DNA of 64,000 nt from IMGVR_UViG_3300027963_000035:186001-250000, one strand, 5' to 3'; shown: positions 21,487 to 42,869, counted from the stretch's first letter. The notes: generated by a model not told the origin, from the sequence alone. Numbers and translations are program-made.

Positions 21487-21963
21487 TTATTTGGAAGCAT
21501 AGTATACTCCAATTCTGTCCGTACTCTCGTTAAAAAGTTGGTATTGAACTATGTTTTCAAAGCCCCATCTTATGAAAGATTCTTCGCAAACCTTCTTTGT
21601 AGCAGGACAGTGATACTCAAAAGCGATTTGCTTGACAGAAGGCAAAGAGGGAATATCTCTAAAGTATATCTCGGCGCCCTCTATATCACACTTAATTACT
21701 TCTGGCTCATATTTTAAAAAATATTCCAGATCTTTTGAGGATCTTATTGCCTTGGCATAAGATACAAACCTATCGTTATCAATATTTTCTTTACTTAAAT
21801 CTACACCAATAACCTTAAGTGCGCCTTTATTTAAAAACCACTGGGCGGTGGATATTGATGAATAAAATTTGCCACAACCCAAATCCAAAACAACTTTATC
21901 TTTAAAATCTAAAAAAGACCAGTGTTCATCAGGTTCTTCAGTTTGTATTTTTTTTTGAGACAT
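21487..21963 (-). CDS. SAM-dependent methyltransferase-like protein
   Basis: VLDLGCG and IKCDIEGAE. Confidence 0.7.
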   Translation of the reverse strand: MSQKKIQTEEPDEHWSFLDFKDKVVLDLGCGKFYSSISTAQWFLNKGALKVIGVDLSKENIDNDRFVSYAKAIRSSKDLEYFLKYEPEVIKCDIEGAEIYFRDIPSLPSVKQIAFEYHCPATKKVCEESFIRWGFENIVQYQLFNESTDRIGVYYASK

Positions 21964-22058
21964 AATTGTGCTTTCTAATGAGTTTATTATAGCTTGGGTG
22001 GTAAGTTTTTCAAGTATAATATAACGCATAAAATGGAGGGCTAAATACTATATAAATT

Positions 22059-22721
22059 ATGAAATCAAATCATAATTTATGTCCTTCTTGTGGACGAGCT
22101 CTTAAAGGAACAAGAAGAAAGTTTTGCTCTACTGAATGCGTACTAAAATCAAGTAATTCAAAACATCAAAATTACAAAAATCAGCACAGACGGGGCGTTT
22201 CAAAAAAAATGCAATTAATGAAGATGAAGGGAATGTCGTGTAAGGTATGTGGATACAAAAAGAACTATGCAGCCATGGCCTTTCATCACAGAGATCCAAA
22301 GAAAAAATCACACGGTCTTGACTCTAGAGCATGTTCAAATATGTCTTGGAAGTCTTTAGTTCTGGAGGCGGAGAAGTGTGATTTGGTGTGCATGAATTGT
22401 CATATGGAAATTCATCATCCACAATTTGAGGCCGAAAATGCAAATAAAATAATGGATGATTTCGTTCAATTCAATCAAACCGAAGTAAATCAGCACCTTC
22501 TTAAACCCATGAATTGCGAGCGATGCGGCGTAGAATATCAACCCGATAAACACAAAAGAAAATTTTGTTCCGATAAATGTTATCGCTTAAACTCTAGAAG
22601 AGTAGAGCGGCCCTCCAAAGAACAACTTGAGAAAGACTTGTCTGAAATGAATTTTGTAAAGGTAGGCAAAAAATATGGTGTATCAGATAATGCAGTGAGA
22701 AAATGGCTTAAGAGCTATTAA
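22059..22721 (+). CDS. Free-standing HNH homing endonuclease with Zn fingers and C-terminal HTH
   Basis: CKVCGY...FHHRDP...CDLVCMNCHMEIH; extra CxxC pairs; YGVSDNAVRKW. Confidence 0.85.
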   Translation: MKSNHNLCPSCGRALKGTRRKFCSTECVLKSSNSKHQNYKNQHRRGVSKKMQLMKMKGMSCKVCGYKKNYAAMAFHHRDPKKKSHGLDSRACSNMSWKSLVLEAEKCDLVCMNCHMEIHHPQFEAENANKIMDDFVQFNQTEVNQHLLKPMNCERCGVEYQPDKHKRKFCSDKCYRLNSRRVERPSKEQLEKDLSEMNFVKVGKKYGVSDNAVRKWLKSY

Positions 22722-22723
22722 AA

Positions 22724-22762
22724 GACACGAGGCTGCTTGATATTGTCAAGCAGCCTCGTGTT
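22724..22762. terminator. Hairpin between HNH gene and tRNA (probable terminator)
   Basis: GACACGAGGCTGCTTGA/TCAAGCAGCCTCGTGTT. Confidence 0.65.
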
Positions 22763-22765
22763 ACG

Positions 22766-23029
22766 TCCGAAGGGTGGGATTCGAACCCACAGTCTACAAA
22801 TTCAAGTTTGTGTGATTTTCACCACTCCTTGGACTTTGTCTTCACCATATCTTACGATTTAGGTGGTCGCCGTTAAGTCTCTACACGTTCCCTTACGGGC
22901 TTCGCTCGGCATTGCCATATGCTCACGCATTTAGGTTTCACCGAATTTGACGACATCCCATACGAAGTTTCCAATCGTATGGCACGAAAATTCATGAGTT
23001 TGTTGCATTAACCGTTTTGCTACCTTCGG
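22766..23029 (-). tRNA. tRNA with CAU anticodon (probably Ile2, possibly elongator Met) containing a group I intron
   Basis: CCGAAGG/CCTTCGG-A acceptor, ACAAA-CTCAT^AA-TTTGT anticodon arm, GTGGG-TTCGAAT-CCCAC T-arm; 16 nt downstream of tilS. Confidence 0.88.
22803..22993 (-). ncRNA. Group I intron (IC3-like), 191 nt, between tRNA positions 36/37
   Basis: P AAATTCGGTGAAAC, Q GCAATGCCGAGC, R GTAGAGACT, S AAGACAAAGTCC; 5' exon ends in U, terminal G. Confidence 0.88.
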
Positions 23030-23045
23030 AAATTAACCAACTGTG

Positions 23046-23699
23046 CTAGTCTAGAATTACCGTCTTATTCTTCAAGTTTTTTTCAATTCTCCTTGAACAA
23101 TATTTTTCTAGACTTAACTTTTGTTTTTTCATTTCTGGAATGATTGTTTGACGAATCCAATTTCTTCTGCTTCCTTTGACAACCTTATTGGTTTCGTCCT
23201 CCACAGTATAGCAATTCCATTTATTCCTGTCAACGTACTCTTGAAAATCTTTTTTCTTACTTAATAGAAAAGGATGGATGATCTTGAATCCATCGAACTC
23301 GCTAATTAATTCAAAAGGATTGTGATTGGGTTGTCCACGAAAACAATTAATTAAATAGCTTTCCACATAATCATTGAGATGATGAGCAGTGATTACATAA
23401 CCTTCGTAATCCACAACCTCTTTATAAAAATTTAAGCGGGCCTCCCTGCAATCTTTTTCTGTTTTTAAATTTTGGCCCTTACCCACAATGCCCTTTAATC
23501 CTAATTTACCACAAAGTTCATGGAACTTATTTTCCATGGCATGGTTCTGTTCTCTTAGATTATGATTAAAGTGCAATGGAGTAATGTTGTATCCCTTGCT
23601 TCTCAACCAAAATAAAGAAGATACGCTATCGACACCCATGCTTACGGCAACATAGCAATGAGTTTCTTTTGAAACAATTTCTTTAATGATCTTGATCAA
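23046..23699 (-). CDS. tilS: tRNA(Ile)-lysidine synthetase (catalytic domain only)
   Basis: PP-loop AVSMGVDS, HFNHNLR, REARL, TAHHLNDYVE, EDETN, RNWIR. Confidence 0.88.
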   Translation of the reverse strand: MIKIIKEIVSKETHCYVAVSMGVDSVSSLFWLRSKGYNITPLHFNHNLREQNHAMENKFHELCGKLGLKGIVGKGQNLKTEKDCREARLNFYKEVVDYEGYVITAHHLNDYVESYLINCFRGQPNHNPFELISEFDGFKIIHPFLLSKKKDFQEYVDRNKWNCYTVEDETNKVVKGSRRNWIRQTIIPEMKKQKLSLEKYCSRRIEKNLKNKTVILD

Positions 23700-25284
23700 G
23701 ACTGAACCTTTTTAAATTTTGGTAACTATTAATTCGCTGCCTACTCTCTTTAATGTCCTGTTCCACTTGCTTCCAGAATTCTTCATCAATGCACTTGGTC
23801 ATAGTTCCCCAAGACACAACCTTATAAATTGTGTTCTTGGTTTCGAATATATTTTTATCTTTATCGAAACCGATTGGGCGACTAGGCATCAATTCCGTTC
23901 CATCCACAACGCCATGAATACGCCAAGTGTCTCCATCTGACCTCATTTGATTGAAATAGCAAGCCTTTTCAATCATCCTGACTGGCTTTTCACTTATCTT
24001 TTCTGTTAGTATATCGTTCATATTCAGGGATGTCTCCATTCTCCTTGATTTTTAGATCTTCATAATCTTCGGCTACTCGTCTATAAAACTCTTGCTTTAT
24101 ATTGTCTAATACACCGGTGATCATGGCGACTTTAGTATAAGAGACATCTCCCATCACATTAGAAACTACTCTAGAGAAACAATAGTTTATATTTCCAAGA
24201 AGTTTTAATACTTCTTCATTAGTTAATGGTTCTTTACTAAATATATTACCATCATCTACGGTTCTTTTCAAGGCCATAACCATAGTGCTGATTGAATTGT
24301 CTAATAGCTTTCTATTTTCTTCTGATATGTAAGGCATCTTTTCCTCAAATTAAAGGTTGGTTCAATTATGCAAAAATAGATGGAGATGTCTTGCTTTTCA
24401 AGAACTCTATTATTTCATCAAAACATTTTTCGCATAGATCAATGTCATATCTGGTTCCATCTTTACCACTAGAATATCCCCAATCTGCACTTAGGGATGC
24501 ACTTTCATAGTTACCCAATTTATCTTTGCATGAGTTCCCACAGATATCGCAAAATGTATCTTCGTGAACTTCAATACTTTTATATTTTTTCATATTCCTA
24601 CCTTTAACTTTATATTAAAAACGTCCCCATTATCTGACGTTGAAACCCTAAATACGGGAAACAGAGGTCAAGGACGTTACCCTTGGCGATCAACTCAAAG
24701 GTGAGTGTTAATTCACTTCTTCCCCAGTATTATAGTCAATAACTGACTTTTTACAAGCCTCTAGCATTTTCTTCAAGTTGTGCTTTAATCCTTCGACATT
24801 ATCTGACACGGGAAGTGATATTTTACCAATGTTTACAATGTCTAGATTTTCATCATGATATACATCATGCACAGTATAAGTAATATCAATTCCTCCCCCA
24901 GGAATCTTGGTTGCTTTTTTAATGACACGGTAATTCCACGACATTATTGTATTCCTTTAAAGTTTGTTTTTTCAATAATGAATACGCAAGAAACTTCATA
25001 TTCTTTTTTGAAATAAGTATTCTTTATCGTGCTCAAGTTTTTGAAACTCTCCCAAGAAAACAATATAGCATAATGGCCAAGGCAAAATATCTTTAACCAT
25101 TTTATAATGATAAAGACAGTCTTTGGTAATTACCATAAAGTGCGGGATTCTGGTCTCTGGTCTGCATCTAACTATAAATCTTGGATTGTTTTTTCTTTCA
25201 GTCCACAATAAAACAAATGCACCAAAAAGACAGTTTCCGTACTTCATATTACTATCTCCATCTTCCTTGATGGATTATACTACA

Positions 25285-26683: not shown

Positions 26684-26969
26684 TATATTATTTAAAGTAG
26701 ACTTCAGTAGCAGCACCCAAAGCAATTGATGATCCTGCTACAACACCAAATGTAAGGAGACATTGCCAAACAATTTCTCCTGTCAATCCACCCCAAATAC
26801 CTGCAATTGCAATAACAGCAGAAGATAAAATCAAAAAGCAAAGGGTGGAACCAACGATCTTTTTTATTTTTAGATTGTTGTTGTTATTGACGATTTTTTT
26901 CATGTTTTCCTTTAGTTGAATAAAAATTTAAAACTCTACTATATATATAGTATAAAGAGTTTTAAATTT

Positions 26970-27428
26970 ATGAAATACACATACACACATGAAACTTTAA
27001 AAGAACTTGTTGAAAGTTCAACATCAGTGAGACAAGTTCTTTTTAAATTAAAATTAGTTGCTGCCGGTGGTAATTACGCCACAATAAAAGCATATATTAA
27101 GAAGTTTAATTTAGACACTTCTCACTTTAAGGGTCACGGATGGTCTAAAGGGTTTGTTCTACCACCAAAAAAACCAATTGAATCATATCTTGTTAAAGGA
27201 AGTAACACTCAAAGTTTCAAACTAAAAAAGAAGTTAATTAGAGAAAAAATCTTTGAACATAAATGCATGAATTGCAAGAATACTCATTGGCTTGGGAATT
27301 TAATTCCAATAGAACTTCACCATAAAGATGGAGATTCTTCAAACAATGAGCTTTCTAATTTAGAAATTCTTTGTTACAACTGCCACGGTTTGACACCAAA
27401 CTTTCGTGGTAAAAACAAGAAAAAATAA
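26970..27428 (+). CDS. Free-standing HNH homing endonuclease
   Basis: CMNC...IELHHKDGDSSNNELSNLEILCYNCH; lies between tRNA-Tyr and tRNA-Leu. Confidence 0.88.
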   Translation: MKYTYTHETLKELVESSTSVRQVLFKLKLVAAGGNYATIKAYIKKFNLDTSHFKGHGWSKGFVLPPKKPIESYLVKGSNTQSFKLKKKLIREKIFEHKCMNCKNTHWLGNLIPIELHHKDGDSSNNELSNLEILCYNCHGLTPNFRGKNKKK

Positions 27429-27429
27429 A

Positions 27430-27716
27430 TGCCAAAGGCGGGGGTCGAACCCGCACAGGATGTTATCCCGAGGGATTTTCTTACCACTATAGTTTTCACT
27501 ACCCTTGCGGTTTGTAGTCTGGACTTTACCTTCACCATAACTTCTCAGTTTTAGGTGCTGCCCGTCAAGTCTCTACACCTTCCTGATTTCTCAGGCTTGG
27601 CTCGGTATTAGCAGTTAAGCCTTCACCGAATTTGAGCAGTTCTGCTCTAAAAGTTTCCTTTTAGGCACTCAATTTAATATCAAGTCCCTTGCGTCTGCCT
27701 ATTTCGCCACTTTGGC
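27430..27716 (-). tRNA. tRNA-Leu(UAA) with group I intron
   Basis: GCCAAAG/CTTTGGC-A, AGGGA-CTT^AAAA-TCCCT, long variable arm, GCGGG-TTCGACC-CCCGC. Confidence 0.92.
27480..27681 (-). ncRNA. Group I intron (IC3-like), 202 nt, after U34
   Basis: P/Q/R/S core, P1 ACTT/GAGT with U-G pair, terminal G; same site as cyanobacterial/plastid trnL(UAA) introns. Confidence 0.9.
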
Positions 27717-34645: not shown

Positions 34646-34664
34646 TGTTTTTTTCTTTGGCCAG

Positions 34665-34764
34665 GGCGAATGGGTGGAATCGAACCACCACAAGGGCATT
34701 TGTTTGCCTACTCTGCTGTCGCAGTTCGGAACTTCCCTCACGCTACCACTACGCTACATTCACC
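34665..34764 (-). ncRNA. tRNA-like RNA with expanded or replaced anticodon domain
   Basis: 8-bp GGTGAATG/CATTCGCC stem, D-loop AGTGGTA, T-arm GGTGG-TTCGATT-CCACC; sigma70-like promoter TTTACA-16-TATACT 7 nt upstream. Confidence 0.65.
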
Positions 34765-39160: not shown

Positions 39161-40956
39161 TATAATTCCAACATTCTACTTTTTTAATTTGATTTGATTT
39201 ATCAAACCATTTATCTCCTTCAATGTATTTGTTTGCTTCTTCTACATTAGAAAGTTTAAGAATAACTCTATAAGAACGTAGTCCAATTTTTTCAAATGTA
39301 TCCAAATAACGCCAAAATAACCACCCCTTTTTCTTGACTTGATACCATTCTTTTCCGTTACCATCAACAAATTTACAAATTTTGTATTTAGTCACTTTTC
39401 TACCCAGGGTCTTGCGAGTAATAAGCCGGTGTTCGATCATCTTGCAGAAAATCGTATTGCGATGCAATTACAGCAAAATATATCCCTAATGAGCCGTTTT
39501 TTGATCTTCTTCCTTCACAACATCCATAAATATTTTTTTCTAAATCATTGTAAAAATTATACCTCAGTGATTGATCTACAAAATATTTCATTTCTTCTAT
39601 AATGTTTGATTTATGATGATCCATCTTACAAAATGGAATGTAAATATTTAATTTTTTTGCTCTTTCTAGCATTTCAGACTTAGAAATAACACACAAATTT
39701 TTTCCTTTGTATATTGTCTGGTGTTCTTTAGTTCTTAAATATGCACCGTATGAATTTTTAAAAACTAAAATTCCAGCCATTGTTGGCAACAAAGATTTAA
39801 TAAGACTTCTTCTGTTCATTTCTTTTCTCCTTGGTTGTTTTTTTCCATCTCAGAGTTTACTTCACCCTTCAGCATAACTAAATCCAATCTAATATTTTTT
39901 ACATCTTCACTTATTTTGTATGAAATAAAAGTCATTATGAATGCCAACATCATAATGATAATCGTGATAAATAAAATAATTGCTTTAAGTAATTTATCGT
40001 TTTCGTTCATTTCTTGTCTCCGTATATAAATTTCCACTCTGATAAGTCTGTATCAACACCAGCAGCATCCCTAATACCATAAATGGTCTTGGGATCATGG
40101 TCGTATTTATGATTACGAATTTCTTTGGTTATTCTGAAGTTCATAATAGGTTGTGTTCTTTAAGAGTTTGATATAAATTTTTTACTTCTTTTTCGTCCAG
40201 CCTTATTTCGCTGGGGTCAGTATTGTTATAACTAAATACTCTGACCAAGTAAGGTTTATTTTTCAAAAACTCATTATAATGAATCTCAACAATATCATAT
40301 TCAAGATTCAGAGTTCTTACTAGAGTTTGCATTTAAAACTCTTAGCGATATGCCGCTCATTGAACATTGTATATGTCAAATGGGCCAAAGAATCCTCTTT
40401 CTATGATTTGATTGACAAACAATTTAATATCCTCAATAGAAGGGTTTCCTGTTTCATTTTCAACTTCTATTGTTATTAGAGTTTTCATAATTTTTCTTAT
40501 ATTAAAACCTAATCACTTTATAATCATTACCAACTTTACAGTTTATACTTCCATGCAAACCTGGGAGGATGATATTAGCAATGATTAACTCTGCCCCAAT
40601 TACTTTATTCTTACTGTAGACTTCTTGGGCTATTTTAACATCTTCTAAAGAGGCAGGACGAGATCCTCTTTCATTAAAGTCTTTGATAACCTTAGTTCTA
40701 TTCTCATCATTAGAACTTGAGCAATCGTCTAAGATTTTTTCTTCTTCTTCTGAAAACTTTGGAGAAAGTCTTTCAATCCATTTATCATCTATCAAACAAA
40801 GGCATCGTGTCATTTTCCCTCCTTGGAAAAATGTTAGTGGGTGCTAATAGCATACCAGAAATTTTTGTTTCGTCAATAGAAAGTTACATCATGATTGAAT
40901 TTATTTATAAAATTATGGTTCAATGCATATATATAAATATATTAAAGGTTCAAGTC

Positions 40957-41523
40957 ATGAAAGTAAAAGATAAAATATTAGAATTAAGGGCATTGGGATA
41001 TTCATATAAAAAAATCCAAGATGAGATCAAGTGCTCAAAAGGAACAATATCGTATCATTGTGGTGAAGGTCAAAAAGAAAAATACGCCAAAAGACGTAAA
41101 TCAAACAGATCTAAACAGCATCCTTTGATTCGCAAGATTGAAAATTTTATTTATGATAAATACTACAAACCTGTTCCGAAGAATAGGCATATTCATACAT
41201 TGCACAAAAACCTGAAGATAAGGATAGAAGGATTCTCTAGAGTTAACAAGGAGTATGCTGGCATGGAATTTACAATTAAAGATTTTTTAGATAAGGTTGG
41301 AGATAATCCAACATGCTCATTAACTGGAAAACCAATTGATTTAATGAAACCTAGAACATATCAATTGGATCATATAATCCCAAGATCTAAGGGGGGAGAA
41401 AATACTCTAAATAACTGTCAGCTTGTTCTCAAGGAAGTCAATTTAGCAAAACATACTTTAAGCTCAGAAGAGTTTGTTAAATTATGCAGAGAAGTTGTTG
41501 ATTATCACGATAGAAAAAACTAA
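40957..41523 (+). CDS. Free-standing HNH endonuclease with N-terminal HTH
   Basis: YQLDHIIPRSKGGENTLNNCQLVLKEVNLAK; TATAAATA (T4 late-promoter-like) at 40932-40939. Confidence 0.85.
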   Translation: MKVKDKILELRALGYSYKKIQDEIKCSKGTISYHCGEGQKEKYAKRRKSNRSKQHPLIRKIENFIYDKYYKPVPKNRHIHTLHKNLKIRIEGFSRVNKEYAGMEFTIKDFLDKVGDNPTCSLTGKPIDLMKPRTYQLDHIIPRSKGGENTLNNCQLVLKEVNLAKHTLSSEEFVKLCREVVDYHDRKN

Positions 41524-41562
41524 TCAAAGTTTGTAGCTCTTTATATTCAAACCAGCTTGTAG

Positions 41563-41703
41563 CTCCGTGACTTGGATTTGAACCAAGAACCATTCGATTA
41601 ATCCACTGTTTGGGCATTGAACCCAACATAAATTGCCAGCTTTTTTGAGCTTCAATTCAGTGGCTTTTTACAGTCGAACACTCTACCGTTGAGTTATCAC
41701 GGA
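41563..41703 (-). tRNA. tRNA-Asn(GUU) with a 69-nt insert in the anticodon
   Basis: TCCGTGA/TCACGGA-G acceptor, intact D and T arms, TTCGA-CTG[insert]TTAA-TCGAA. Confidence 0.8.
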
Positions 41704-41768
41704 ATAATTAGCACAAAATATTAATAGTAAATACTTTGCACTTTTCTAAACAAAACAAAAAAACAAAA

Positions 41769-42045
41769 TGACCCAGCCAAGGATCGAACTTGGAACCTAC
41801 AGCTTAGCGGTACCACTATAGTTTTCACTACCATTACTGTTTGTGGTCTGGACTTTATCTTCACCATTGTCTTTCAACTTTAGGTGTCGCCTGTTAAGTC
41901 TCTACACCTTCCTAATTGCTTAGGCTTGGCTCGGTATTAGCAGTTAAGCCTTCACCGAATTTAAGCGATTCTACATTAAAGATTTCTCTCTAAGCACTCC
42001 TATTTCACGAAGGCTGTTGCTCTTATCCAATTGAGCTACTGGGCC
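41769..42045 (-). tRNA. tRNA-Arg(UCU) with group I intron
   Basis: GGCCCAG/CTGGGTC-A, ACAGC-CTT^CTAA-GCTGT, CCAAG-TTCGATC-CTTGG. Confidence 0.9.
41808..42009 (-). ncRNA. Group I intron (IC3-like), 202 nt, after U34
   Basis: Core nearly identical to the tRNA-Leu intron; IGS TAGGAG can pair with exon CUU (P1) and CUA (P10); terminal G. Confidence 0.9.
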
Positions 42046-42869
42046 AAAAATCAACCTAAATCAAACCAAAATCAACCTTTAAACCTTTATCCCCTTTTTT
42101 ACAGTTTTAGGACTGGTTTTTTACTTGCATTTAAAATACAATTGGCAAATTGTACCAGTTCTTCAACTGAATTTCCACAGGGGTTTGCATTTGATGAACC
42201 AACGACTTCTTCATTATCATTATAGTAAACTTCTTGAATAATGAAATAGTCTTGCATTTCACCAATATTTACTACTCGGTAATCAGAGTTCACATTAACC
42301 TCCTTGATCTGCTGTTTCCTTGTATTTATTTTTCATTTCATCCGTGACTTGAAACTTTTCCAACTTCTCAAGAAAACCTAATTTTTCTTCGTTGGTTAAT
42401 GGCTGATCAATTTTATTTTTACCAAGGTCGGTGCTATAGTATGGCGTTAATGGCTTTGCGATTTCAAAGCAATTGAAAATAACTTCTGGCAAGTCCTTTG
42501 GATTCTTAACTAGCCTTTCAAGATTATTCTTGATCTTGAAAAGAGCAGAACTAAGATATGCCTTGTGATCTAGTTGATTGATATAAATTTCTTTATTTGC
42601 TTCAAATAGGCTATTCAACTTGAGAATAGTCTCTTTGATTTCCTTATCGTTATCAATGTAGGACATTTTTTGTTTTCTTTAAAATATTAATTTCGTCGGA
42701 GATTCTTCTAAATGCTTCTTTTACACTCTTGAAAAGCAGAACCTTATCTTCTGTTTTGCTATAAAGTTCGTATTCTTCATCTTTTTTTTTAATGATGAAG
42801 CCGTTATTGGTTGCGAACTTACTCAAGTCCTCAGAATTTAATTCTCTCATATTTTTTTATAATAAAAAA

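What the first reader, a model, noticed from the sequence alone, without database searches (positions are those of the whole stretch)
22766..23699. TilS plus an intron-containing CAU tRNA: a self-contained AUA-decoding cassette with a very small intron
Seen: a compact tilS stops 16 nt before a CAU tRNA with a C1-G72 pair (so not an initiator), whose 191-nt intron lies at 36/37. Known: TilS makes lysidine-34, converting CAU tRNA to Ile2, and the Azoarcus tRNA-Ile intron at the same site is 205 nt. Inference: an AT-rich phage supplies its own AUA decoding, with splicing needed before modification; the intron is a candidate minimal natural group I ribozyme.
Basis: partly seen in the sequence, partly recalled or inferred. 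Interest (0 to 1): 0.65.

Follow-up and report, generated by a model that had tools for sequence, protein, structure and literature searches.

The report
Phage TilS, intron-split tRNA-Ile2 cassette
A large T4-like environmental phage carries a stripped-down lysidine synthetase gene followed 16 bases later by its probable substrate, a CAU-anticodon isoleucine tRNA interrupted by a 191-base Azoarcus-type self-splicing intron; the parts are each known, but this combination in a phage is new.

Summary
On the minus strand, a 217-aa ORF (23699-23046) is followed 16 nt later by a tRNA(CAU) (23029-22766). A 191-nt group I intron (22993-22803) splits the tRNA between positions 36 and 37.

- **The ORF** is a TilS catalytic domain only, with neither C-terminal tRNA-binding domain. 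That length is native to a large family of about 205-240-aa proteins on jumbo-phage contigs.
- **The tRNA** is not an initiator. It has the G3-C70 pair that a published survey found excludes Met and fMet.
- **The pairing is conserved.** 12 of 14 related phage tilS genes have a tRNA(CAU) within 1 kb downstream, mostly without an intron.
- **Codon use fits.** AUA is the phage's commonest Ile codon (49%).
- **The intron** belongs to the Azoarcus tRNA-Ile family, with the same site and the same GUG guide. Covariation across 57 homologues supports P1-P9.

It is small but not minimal: introns of 190 and 184 nt occur in other viral tRNAs.

Each abuts a convergent free-standing HNH endonuclease gene, so the intron looks like selfish mobile DNA rather than a regulator. 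Nothing here was tested biochemically.

The parts
23046..23699 (-). tilS: 217-aa lysidine synthetase consisting of the catalytic N-terminal PP-loop domain only (TTG start, TAG stop). Its start overlaps the end of the upstream ORF 24039..23683 by 17 nt.
   Evidence: TIGR02432 scores 99.6 bits (cut-off 93.6) and PF01171 gives 7e-26. The best solved relative is A. aeolicus TilS, E 9e-15, aligned to chain residues 19-222 of 317, with motifs SMGVDS, HFNHNLRE, TAHHLNDYVES, EDETN and RNWIRQTIIP. The AF2 model has pLDDT 93, and its top folds are TilS structures 2e21, 1ni5 and 3a2k with TMq 0.75-0.80.
23030..23045 (-). 16-nt spacer between the tilS stop codon and tRNA position 1. It would be the 5' leader removed by RNase P if the two genes are co-transcribed.
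   Evidence: Read directly from the sequence. Spacers of 7-26 nt occur in seven related loci.
22994..23029 (-). tRNA(CAU) 5' exon, positions 1-36: acceptor 5' strand CCGAAGG, a 3-bp D stem, anticodon stem ACAAA, then loop bases C32 U33 C34 A35 U36.
   Evidence: ARAGORN intron mode; manual reading.
22803..22993 (-). 191-nt group I intron, subgroup IC3, Azoarcus tRNA-Ile type, with no ORF. Guide GUG is at 22985-22983. The L2 GAAA loop is at 22971-22968. The P5 receptor is at 22935-22930 and 22919-22915. P7 is at 22881-22876 and 22835-22831. The P8 receptor is at 22863-22858 and 22849-22845. The L9 GAAA loop is at 22820-22817. The terminal G is at 22803.
   Evidence: RF00028 scores 59.2 bits. It is 77-81% identical to the nearest betaproteobacterial tRNA(CAU) introns. 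Pair counts over 57 distinct homologues support P1-P9 and P9.0 with compensatory changes. The MFE fold recovers P2-P6, P8 and P9.
22766..22802 (-). tRNA(CAU) 3' exon, positions 37-73: A37 A38, stem UUUGU, variable loop AGACU, T arm, acceptor 3' strand CCUUCGG, A73. No CCA is encoded.
22725..22761 (-). 16-bp hairpin followed by CTTTTAATAG. It is the likely terminator of the tilS-tRNA unit and could also end the convergent HNH gene.
   Evidence: Terminator scan.
22059..22721 (+). Free-standing HNH endonuclease gene (220 aa), convergent on the tRNA 3' end. It is an indel relative to a 97%-identical phage.
   Evidence: phrog_2255 gives 2.9e-19, with other HNH PHROGs also matching. Window 22087-22706 is cleanly absent from IMGVR_UViG_3300023174_000040, which keeps the tRNA, intron and tilS.

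Best explanation
**What it is.** This is a phage-encoded module for reading the isoleucine codon AUA.

**Predicted pathway (inferred, not shown).**
1. tilS and the tRNA are probably transcribed together and end at the hairpin 22761-22725.
2. The intron folds. Its GUG guide pairs with C34-A35-U36 of the 5' exon, and it splices itself out by the usual two guanosine-dependent transesterifications.
3. The ends are trimmed and CCA is added.
4. The 217-aa TilS uses ATP and lysine to convert C34 to lysidine.
5. The tRNA is then charged by the host IleRS instead of MetRS and reads AUA, the phage's commonest Ile codon.

**How the enzyme might find its substrate (inferred).** The enzyme has no C-terminal tRNA-binding domains, so it would have to recognise its substrate through the anticodon stem-loop alone.

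**What the intron is doing there.** The intron is most likely a selfish passenger of the Azoarcus tRNA-Ile family, possibly mobilised with the adjacent free-standing HNH endonuclease. It is tolerated because it splices.

**Shown here:** gene identities, exon and intron boundaries, RNA helices with covariation, conserved gene order, and codon use.
For: **TilS identity.**
- Family-model, solved-structure and fold matches all point to TilS.
- The short length is native: 383 clusters at E<=1e-10, and the 120 listed are all 206-244 aa, on contigs up to 490 kb.
- 24 residues, including the PP-loop Ser, Gly, Asp and Ser, are invariant down to 29% identity.

**tRNA identity.**
- The 1-72 pair is Watson-Crick. 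It changes C-G to U-A in the relative L061, a compensatory change. The stem lacks GGG/CCC, and the tRNA lacks A11-U24 and G12-C23, so it is not fMet.
- Silva et al. 2006 found that G3 or C70 excludes Met and fMet and indicates Ile (PMC1635315).
- All 11 sequenced tilS-linked tRNA(CAU) genes that lie downstream of the 12 tilS genes at 50% identity or more have G3-C70.

**Linkage.** 12 of 14 IMG/VR loci with TilS at 50% identity or more have a tRNA(CAU) within 1 kb downstream on the same strand, seven of them 7-26 nt away. The tRNA bodies differ, and the introns are absent, the same, or different.

**Demand.**
- ATA is used at 37 per 1000 codons, 49% of Ile codons.
- The phage's other U34 tRNAs read TTA, AGA, CAA, AAA, GAA, GGA and ACA, each the top codon of its family.

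**Intron.**
- It passes the Rfam cut-off.
- 62 homologues lie in tRNA(CAU) genes, none of Met/fMet type: most have G3-C70 and the rest, with C3-G70, carry C4-G69 and mostly C5-G68. All share the CAU|AA site and the GUG guide.
- Covariation supports P1-P9.

**Other.** The genetic code is standard. rIIA and rIIB mark a T4-like phage.
Against: - There is no biochemical or expression evidence.
- The PP-loop reads SMGVDS instead of SGGxDS in this clade, although that is invariant among the four aligned members of the clade.
[quoted passage not shown] An enzyme with only the N-terminal domain might therefore need a partner or be weak.
- The tRNA lacks C4-G69 and C5-G68, which are frequent in Ile2.
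- It also lacks the E. coli IleRS elements as I recall them, U12-A23 and C29-G41.
- The TIGR02432 score is only 6 bits above its cut-off.
- One relative (G002) keeps tilS and the tRNA 12 kb apart, and more distant short TilS genes (27-33% identity) have no tRNA nearby.
- The host, and so the host's AUA capacity, is unknown.
Confidence: 0.78

Rival explanations
1. The tRNA is an ordinary elongator tRNA-Met. The PP-loop protein modifies something else, such as another tRNA position or a host tRNA, and the adjacency is incidental.
For: ARAGORN labels it tRNA-Met by anticodon. The protein also gives weak matches to QueC, TtuA, TtcA and MnmA models. The tRNA lacks C4-G69 and C5-G68.
Against: The TilS-specific model passes its curated cut-off, while the other PP-loop models score 15-22 bits against cut-offs of 237-450. 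The TilS signature motifs are present and no Fe-S cysteine motifs are seen. G3-C70 is reported as excluding Met. The adjacency recurs in 12 of 14 diverged loci.
Confidence: 0.07
2. The parts are as described, but the purpose is defence evasion rather than codon supply. The phage brings a private tRNA-Ile2 and modifier to stay independent of a host tRNA or TilS that is depleted, cleaved or shut off during infection.
For: Phage tRNAs are known to replace host tRNAs cut by defence nucleases (PMC13096335 abstract). The tRNA body is very unlike bacterial Ile2: a C1-G72 pair, a 3-bp D stem and A-U pairs at 4-69 and 5-68. That could help it escape nucleases specific for host tRNAs.
Against: No anticodon nuclease aimed at tRNA-Ile2 is known to me. 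The whole phage tRNA set tracks the phage's own preferred A-ending codons, which codon supply explains more simply. The two purposes do not exclude each other.
Confidence: 0.1
3. The intron is a regulatory gate. Slow or conditional splicing would time the appearance of the AUA decoder, and so the translation of AUA-rich genes, during infection.
For: Splicing must come before C34 modification, because the anticodon is paired in P1. Two different group I introns, at 36/37 and at 33/34, have settled in tilS-linked tRNA(CAU) genes.
Against: Seven of the 12 related cassettes with a tRNA within 1 kb have no intron. Introns of the same kind sit in Leu, Arg and Gln tRNAs of this genome next to HNH genes. 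The Azoarcus relative splices efficiently on its own (PMC13168695).
Confidence: 0.05

Closest known systems
[quoted passage not shown]
   Same: Same host gene type, a CAU tRNA. Same insertion site after U36. Same 3-bp CAU/GUG P1 with a U-G wobble at the splice site. Same GAAA loops on P2 and P9 with 11-nt-type receptors in P8 and P5. Same invariant P7. No ORF. It is 77-81% identical to the nearest betaproteobacterial members of this family.
   Different: It sits in a phage, not a bacterium. It is 14 nt shorter, mainly because P6a is cut to a 3-bp stem with a GUAA loop and L5 is shorter. The exon tRNA body is unrelated: CCGAAGG instead of the GGGCCUC type. The Azoarcus sequence itself was not fetched, so the comparison is with 50-odd homologues from Burkholderiales, Rhodocyclaceae and Methylophilaceae genomes.
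Bacterial TilS, type I (E. coli, G. kaustophilus) and type II (A. aeolicus, PDB 1wy5/2e21)
   Same: The catalytic N-terminal PP-loop domain, the TilS signature motifs and the fold.
   Different: It lacks both CTD1 and CTD2. The literature describes TilS as always having at least CTD1 (PMC11947777). The PP-loop is SMG instead of SGG in this clade.
Putative TilS of Pseudomonas jumbo phages PA5oct and MIJ3 (203 aa; PMC6892783)
   Same: A short phage TilS with only the N-terminal domain, in the same wider family at 28% identity. PA5oct also carries a G3-C70 tRNA(CAU) in its tRNA cluster.
   Different: In PA5oct the tRNA lies about 9 kb from tilS, there is no intron, and the authors left the function open. 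Here the enzyme and tRNA form an adjacent unit.
Plastid tilS-trnI(CAU) module (PMC13494906) and phage T4 tRNA-Ile (the latter from my own knowledge)
   Same: A small genome keeps its own AUA decoder, and in plastids its modifier too.
   Different: Those tRNAs have no intron. T4 relies on host TilS. I saw only the title and abstract of the plastid paper.
Free-standing homing endonucleases beside their target genes: T4 SegB in the tRNA cluster (PMC2330249), and from my own knowledge F-CphI beside the intron-containing psbA of cyanophage S-PM2
   Same: An endonuclease gene outside the intron abuts an intron-containing or tRNA gene, and it is present or absent between near-identical phages.
   Different: The family is HNH rather than GIY-YIG. 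The target site is unknown. HNH genes also sit beside two intron-less tilS-linked tRNAs.

Membership tests
TilS (tRNA-Ile lysidine synthetase) | N-terminal catalytic domain matching the TilS-specific model above its curated cut-off | tested here: met
   TIGR02432 scores 99.6 bits against 93.6. The full-length E. coli-type model NF007942 scores only 45.6 against 606, as expected for a single domain.
TilS (tRNA-Ile lysidine synthetase) | PP-loop SGGxDS and TilS signature motifs | tested here: met
   The PP-loop is SMGVDS, a variant that is invariant among the four aligned members of the clade. HFNHNLRE, TAHHLNDYVES, EDETN and RNWIRQTIIP align to A. aeolicus TilS.
TilS (tRNA-Ile lysidine synthetase) | TilS catalytic-domain fold | tested here: met
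   The AF2 model has pLDDT 93. Its best PDB matches are TilS structures 2e21, 1ni5 and 2e89 at TMq 0.79-0.80, ahead of TtuA at about 0.70.
TilS (tRNA-Ile lysidine synthetase) | At least one C-terminal tRNA-binding domain (CTD1; also CTD2 in type I) | tested here: not met
   The protein ends at the boundary of the N-terminal domain, aligning to residues 19-222 of the 317-aa A. aeolicus chain. The 120 family members listed are all 206-244 aa. It is therefore a TilS catalytic-domain homologue of a new, shorter architecture, not a type I or type II TilS.
TilS (tRNA-Ile lysidine synthetase) | ATP- and lysine-dependent conversion of C34 to lysidine | not testable with these tools
   This needs an enzyme assay or mass spectrometry.
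tRNA-Ile2 (CAU, lysidine-modified) | CAU anticodon in an elongator body: a paired 1-72, no GGG/CCC anticodon stem, no A11-U24 or G12-C23 | tested here: met
   The tRNA has C1-G72 (U1-A72 in relative L061), anticodon stem ACAAA/UUUGU, and D stem G10-C11-A12. The criteria come from PMC1635315.
tRNA-Ile2 (CAU, lysidine-modified) | Acceptor-stem discriminator against Met: position 3-70 is not C-G | tested here: met
   The tRNA has G3-C70. All 11 sequenced downstream tilS-linked tRNA(CAU) genes share it.
tRNA-Ile2 (CAU, lysidine-modified) | C4-G69 and C5-G68 (frequent in Ile2, not universal) | tested here: not met
   The tRNA has A4-U69 and A5-U68. In E. coli the C-G pairs at these positions are, from my own recollection of the literature, read by the C-terminal domain that this TilS lacks.
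tRNA-Ile2 (CAU, lysidine-modified) | Isotype-model score of the mature (joined) tRNA; lysidine at position 34 and Ile charging | not tested
   The joined exon sequence has no reference, so it was not sent to any search tool. The chemistry is not testable here.
Group I intron, IC3, Azoarcus tRNA-Ile type | Match to the group I covariance model above the gathering score | tested here: met
   RF00028 scores 59.2 bits against 50, E 1.8e-12, over the full model length.
Group I intron, IC3, Azoarcus tRNA-Ile type | A U-G wobble at the 5' splice site in P1, a terminal G, and insertion after U36 of a CAU tRNA | tested here: met
   CAU pairs with GUG in 57 of 57 homologues, and all introns end in G.
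Group I intron, IC3, Azoarcus tRNA-Ile type | Core helices P3-P9 including the P3/P7 pseudoknot, kept by compensatory changes | tested here: met
   In P3, P7 and P9 every proposed pair is standard in 57 of 57 sequences. In P4 all are except one pair (51 of 57). Two-sided changes occur in P2, P3, P5, P6, P8, P9 and P9.0; the one variable P1 pair (1-8) changes on one side at a time. P7 is invariant. The alignment was made with MAFFT, not fitted to the structure.
Group I intron, IC3, Azoarcus tRNA-Ile type | Self-splicing activity | not testable with these tools
   This needs in vitro transcription with GTP and Mg2+. No RNA reads were available.

The most novel reading that the evidence does not exclude
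The 217-aa protein is a fully active, minimal lysidine synthetase that selects its co-encoded tRNA through the anticodon stem-loop alone. That would be a third TilS architecture with no C-terminal domain. In addition, group I introns in phage tRNA anticodon loops, paired with neighbouring free-standing HNH genes, form a widespread class of composite mobile elements: the intron breaks up the endonuclease's target site and so protects the carrier genome. [quoted passage not shown]
Probability: 0.35. Interest if true: 0.72.

Novelty: new variant of a known kind. Interest (0 to 1): 0.55.

Why it matters
1. **An open TilS question becomes testable.** PMC11947777 asks how TilS enzymes that do not touch the acceptor stem tell tRNA-Ile2 from tRNA-Met. 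This cassette offers a natural enzyme with no C-terminal domain and its own substrate encoded next to it.
2. **Group I introns are common in phage tRNA genes.** One exact core pattern hit more than 118 IMG/VR contigs. A 2014 review stated that all phage introns lie in protein-coding genes. A 2019 paper called phage tRNA introns unreported and enigmatic.
3. **A pool of small natural ribozymes.** The intron adds to a set of natural group I ribozymes of 184-200 nt, related to the structurally best-known one. These are useful for studying minimal ribozymes.
4. **A warning for annotators.** Standard tRNA finders miss these genes, or misname them as 'SeC' or 'Stop' suppressors. That could wrongly suggest stop-codon recoding.

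Tried and rejected
- **Alternative genetic code.** ARAGORN called an intron-containing 'tRNA-SeC(tca)' in this genome. Stop-to-stop ORF statistics and stop-codon use fit the standard code. By homology of P1 and the intron's 3' end, the gene is tRNA-Gln(UUG), and the relative L013 is called Gln. Rejected.
- **Initiator tRNA.** Rejected on the 1-72 pair, the anticodon stem and the D stem.
- **Phage-encoded IleRS.** None was found in the 251 kb held, but the record is only about half a genome.
- **Literature.** Searches found no paper describing group I introns in phage tRNA genes or a phage tilS-tRNA cassette. The library is incomplete, so this is not proof of absence.
- **A strict intron-HNH coupling.** The HNH genes also flank two intron-less tilS-linked tRNAs. 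Two intron-bearing loci lack an intact HNH gene. It is therefore an enrichment, not a rule.
- **Joined tRNA left out.** The joined (spliced) tRNA sequence was not submitted to any search or classifier. The exons were analysed in place and by reference only.

Full report
**1. Setting**

The window is bases 186001-250000 of a 251,265-bp linear IMG/VR virus record that CheckV rates about 50% complete. GC content is about 35%. rIIA and rIIB homologues mark it as a large T4-like phage. ORF statistics and stop-codon use (TAA 120, TGA 58, TAG 23) fit the standard code.

**2. The observation**

| Feature | Window coordinates | Notes |
|---|---|---|
| ORF | 23699-23046 | 217 aa, stop TAG |
| Spacer | 23045-23030 | 16 nt |
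| tRNA 5' exon | 23029-22994 | ends CUCAU |
| Intron | 22993-22803 | 191 nt, ends in G |
| tRNA 3' exon | 22802-22766 | starts AAUUUGU, A73, no CCA encoded |
| Hairpin | 22761-22725 | 16 bp, then a short T run |

Default ARAGORN and the Rfam tRNA model do not see the gene. ARAGORN in intron mode gives a clean cloverleaf with the intron at 36/37.

**3. The protein**

- It passes the curated cut-off of the TilS N-domain model: TIGR02432, 99.6 bits against 93.6. PF01171 gives E 7e-26.
- Its best solved relative is A. aeolicus TilS, at E 9e-15. The alignment covers only residues 19-222 of that 317-aa chain. It includes the PP-loop and the HxNHxLR, AHHxND..E, ED.(T/S)N and RN.IR motifs.
- An AlphaFold model (pLDDT 93) matches TilS structures best, at TMq 0.75-0.80, ahead of TtuA at about 0.70.
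- Neither C-terminal domain is present. This is not a truncation. 383 protein clusters at E<=1e-10 were found, and the 120 listed are all 206-244 aa, some on contigs of 260-490 kb.
- 24 residues are invariant down to 29% identity.
- The clade has SMGVDS where the wider family has SGG(V/I)DS.

The literature divides TilS into type I (with CTD1 and CTD2) and type II (with CTD1). [quoted passage not shown] A 203-aa 'TilS' was noted in Pseudomonas jumbo phages MIJ3 and PA5oct, with its function left open (PMC6892783).

**4. The tRNA**

It is not an initiator:
- Positions 1-72 are paired: C-G here, U-A in a relative, which is a compensatory change.
- The anticodon stem is ACAAA/UUUGU.
- The D stem lacks A11-U24 and G12-C23.

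Silva et al. surveyed 234 genomes. They found that G3/A3 or C70/U70 exclude tRNA-Met and tRNA-fMet and indicate tRNA-Ile(CAU) (PMC1635315). This tRNA has G3-C70. It lacks C4-G69 and C5-G68, which are frequent in Ile2. From my own recollection of the literature, E. coli TilS reads those pairs through the C-terminal domain that this enzyme does not have.

**5. Linkage**

A profile search of IMG/VR found 38 loci with short TilS genes. Among the 14 at 50% identity or more, 12 have a tRNA(CAU) within 1 kb downstream on the same strand. Seven of those lie 7-26 nt away.

The tRNA bodies differ, with acceptor strands CCGAAGG, CCGAGAG, CCGACUA, GGGCCAU, GGGACGU and GGGCCGA. All sequenced ones keep G3-C70.

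| Intron state of the 12 linked tRNAs | Number |
|---|---|
| No intron | 7 |
| 191-nt intron at 36/37 | 2 |
| Different group I intron between U33 and C34 | 2 |
| Not examined (L283, same spacing as L282) | 1 |

Two further points:
- One relative (G002) keeps tilS 12 kb from an orthologous tRNA whose intron is 222 nt long, with an extended P1.
- Another (G003) has the intron-less cassette plus a tRNA-Ile(UAU).

Conserved adjacency across such divergence is the strongest argument that enzyme and tRNA work together.

**6. Demand**

In 123 long ORFs, ATA is the commonest Ile codon, at 37 per 1000 codons, or 49% of Ile. The phage's other tRNAs have anticodons UAA, UCU, UUG, UUU, UUC, UCC and UGU. 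Each reads the phage's preferred A-ending codon. A lysidine-bearing AUA reader completes that set; a Met elongator would not.

The phage also encodes two CCA-adding-enzyme-like ORFs, which fits tRNA genes that lack CCA. No IleRS was found in the half-genome held.

**7. The intron**

Rfam RF00028 matches at 59.2 bits over the full model. An exact 20-nt core pattern was found in 108 stretches of GTDB genome contigs, largely Betaproteobacteria and cyanobacteria among the records listed, and in 19 viral contigs. 62 of the hits lie in tRNA(CAU) genes, none of Met/fMet type: most have G3-C70 and the rest, with C3-G70, carry C4-G69 and mostly C5-G68. In the 61 whose boundaries could be normalised, the intron comes after U36 and carries a GUG guide; lengths across the 62 are 190-264 nt.

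This intron is 77-81% identical to the nearest betaproteobacterial ones. It is shorter mainly because P6a is reduced to a 3-bp stem with a GUAA loop.

In a MAFFT alignment of 57 distinct homologues, the proposed pairs of P1, P3, P4, P7, P9 and P9.0 are standard in essentially all sequences. Two-sided changes occur in P2, P3, P5, P6, P8, P9 and P9.0; the one variable P1 pair changes on one side at a time.

The sequence also shows GAAA loops on P2 and P9, and 11-nt-type receptors in P8 and P5, as in Azoarcus. The free-energy fold alone recovers most helices, but it is not exceptional against shuffles (z -1.4). So the case rests on homology and covariation.

The intron is therefore a credible self-splicing ribozyme. 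It is not the smallest of its kind. A 190-nt homologue (L152) and a 184-nt intron in a viral tRNA-Lys(UUU) (L048) exist.

**8.

The genome has four group I introns. All are in tRNA anticodon loops: CAU, Leu(UAA), Arg(UCU) and Gln(UUG). Related phages carry the same kinds.

One core pattern hit more than 118 IMG/VR contigs, mostly in tRNA-Leu(UAA). The 735-kb phage LR756501 has one too.

A 2014 review said all phage introns lie in protein-coding genes (PMC3984707). In 2019, tRNA introns in Lak phages were called previously unreported and enigmatic (PMC6784885).

Each of the four intron-bearing tRNA genes here abuts a convergent free-standing HNH endonuclease gene. The one beside tRNA(CAU) is cleanly missing from a 97%-identical phage that keeps the intron. 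HNH genes also flank two intron-less tilS-linked tRNAs. So they behave as mobile endonucleases associated with tRNA genes, enriched at intron-bearing genes but not confined to them.

**9. Mechanism and its status**

- **Shown:** gene identities, boundaries, RNA helices, conserved gene order and codon use.
- **Inferred:** co-transcription, self-splicing, end maturation, lysidine formation by a domain-minimal enzyme that reads only the anticodon arm, Ile charging by the host enzyme, and AUA decoding.
- **Splicing before modification:** it must come first, because C34-A35-U36 are paired with the guide in the precursor.
- **Why the intron is probably a passenger:** most sister cassettes lack it, and the HNH genes lie alongside. 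These argue that the intron is a tolerated mobile passenger, not a control device.

**10. Limits**

- The joined, spliced tRNA has no reference. It was not sent to any search or classifier, so isotype scoring of the mature sequence was left out.
- The host is unknown. The betaproteobacterial affinity of the intron is only a hint.

Noticed in passing
window 27430-27716 (-), window 41768-42046 (-), and genome C1:144281-144554 (-), outside the window: Three more group I introns of about 202 nt, in tRNA-Leu(UAA), tRNA-Arg(UCU) and tRNA-Gln(UUG), each after U34. All are above the Rfam cut-off. Related phages G001-G003 and the 735-kb phage LR756501 carry the same kinds.
   Followed up: partly
genome C1:144281-144554 (locus L001:1444-1717): ARAGORN calls this 'tRNA-SeC(tca)', which would suggest an opal suppressor. 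The P1 pairing ACUU/GAGU and the conserved intron end ..GUGGUAAG place the splice sites 3 nt upstream, giving tRNA-Gln(UUG). Other loci were similarly miscalled as 'Stop(tta)', 'Lys(ttt)' or 'Gln(ttg)' (L277, L281, L279). The genome uses the standard code.
   Followed up: yes
window 22059-22721 (+), 26916-27428 (+), 40717-41523 (+); L001:785-1468 (+): Each of the four intron-bearing tRNA genes is abutted at its 3' end by a convergent free-standing HNH endonuclease gene (PHROG E 3e-19 to 9e-46). Window 22087-22706 is cleanly absent from a 97%-identical phage (L273). A further match to these HNH proteins lies beside the intron-less tRNA-Lys, at genome 161101-161358.
   Followed up: partly
window 41562-41703 (-): tRNA-Asn(GUU) carries a 69-nt insert between U35 and U36, conserved at 64-69 nt in four related phages. 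It has a closing stem CCACUG/CAGUGG, a small hairpin and a T-arm-like GGGUUCAAUNCCC, so it looks like a tRNA minihelix. It is not a group I intron and how it is removed is unknown. It recalls the 'intron that may encode a tRNA' described in Lak phages (PMC6784885).
   Followed up: partly
window 34664-34763 (-): tRNA-Gly(UCC) has a 27-nt insert in the anticodon loop region, identical in phage G001 (L034). Its nature is unknown. The Rfam tRNA score is only 38 bits.
   Followed up: no
L281:3168-3453 and L277:4127-4409: In two other phages the tilS-linked tRNA(CAU), with acceptor strand CCGAGAG, carries a different group I intron of about 210 nt between U33 and C34, directly before the base TilS modifies. 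This is a second, independent invasion of the same gene.
   Followed up: partly
L048 (IMGVR_UViG_3300032296_001952) and L152 (IMGVR_UViG_3300044295_000252): Smaller group I introns occur in viral tRNA genes: 184 nt in tRNA-Lys(UUU) and 190 nt in a tRNA(CAU) of bacterial type.
   Followed up: partly
genome C1:123985-124416 (-) and 97226-97654 (-), outside the window: Two ORFs (441 and 416 aa) match the PolyA_pol / CCA-adding enzyme family. This fits phage tRNA genes that do not encode CCA.
   Followed up: no
L027 (G003:C1:144314-144386): Relative G003 has both the intron-less tilS-tRNA(CAU) cassette and a tRNA-Ile(UAU), that is, two different routes to AUA decoding in one phage.
   Followed up: no
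window 23205-23233 (-): A near-consensus sigma-70-like site (TTGACA, 17 nt, TG-TATACT; 11 of 12 matches) lies inside tilS, about 175 nt upstream of the tRNA. It might give the tRNA its own promoter. This is a consensus match only.
   Followed up: no
window 21487-22029 (-): A 180-aa ORF gives weak matches to SAM methyltransferase and FtsJ-like families, below the Pfam cut-offs, just beyond the HNH gene. It could be another RNA-modification gene.
   Followed up: no
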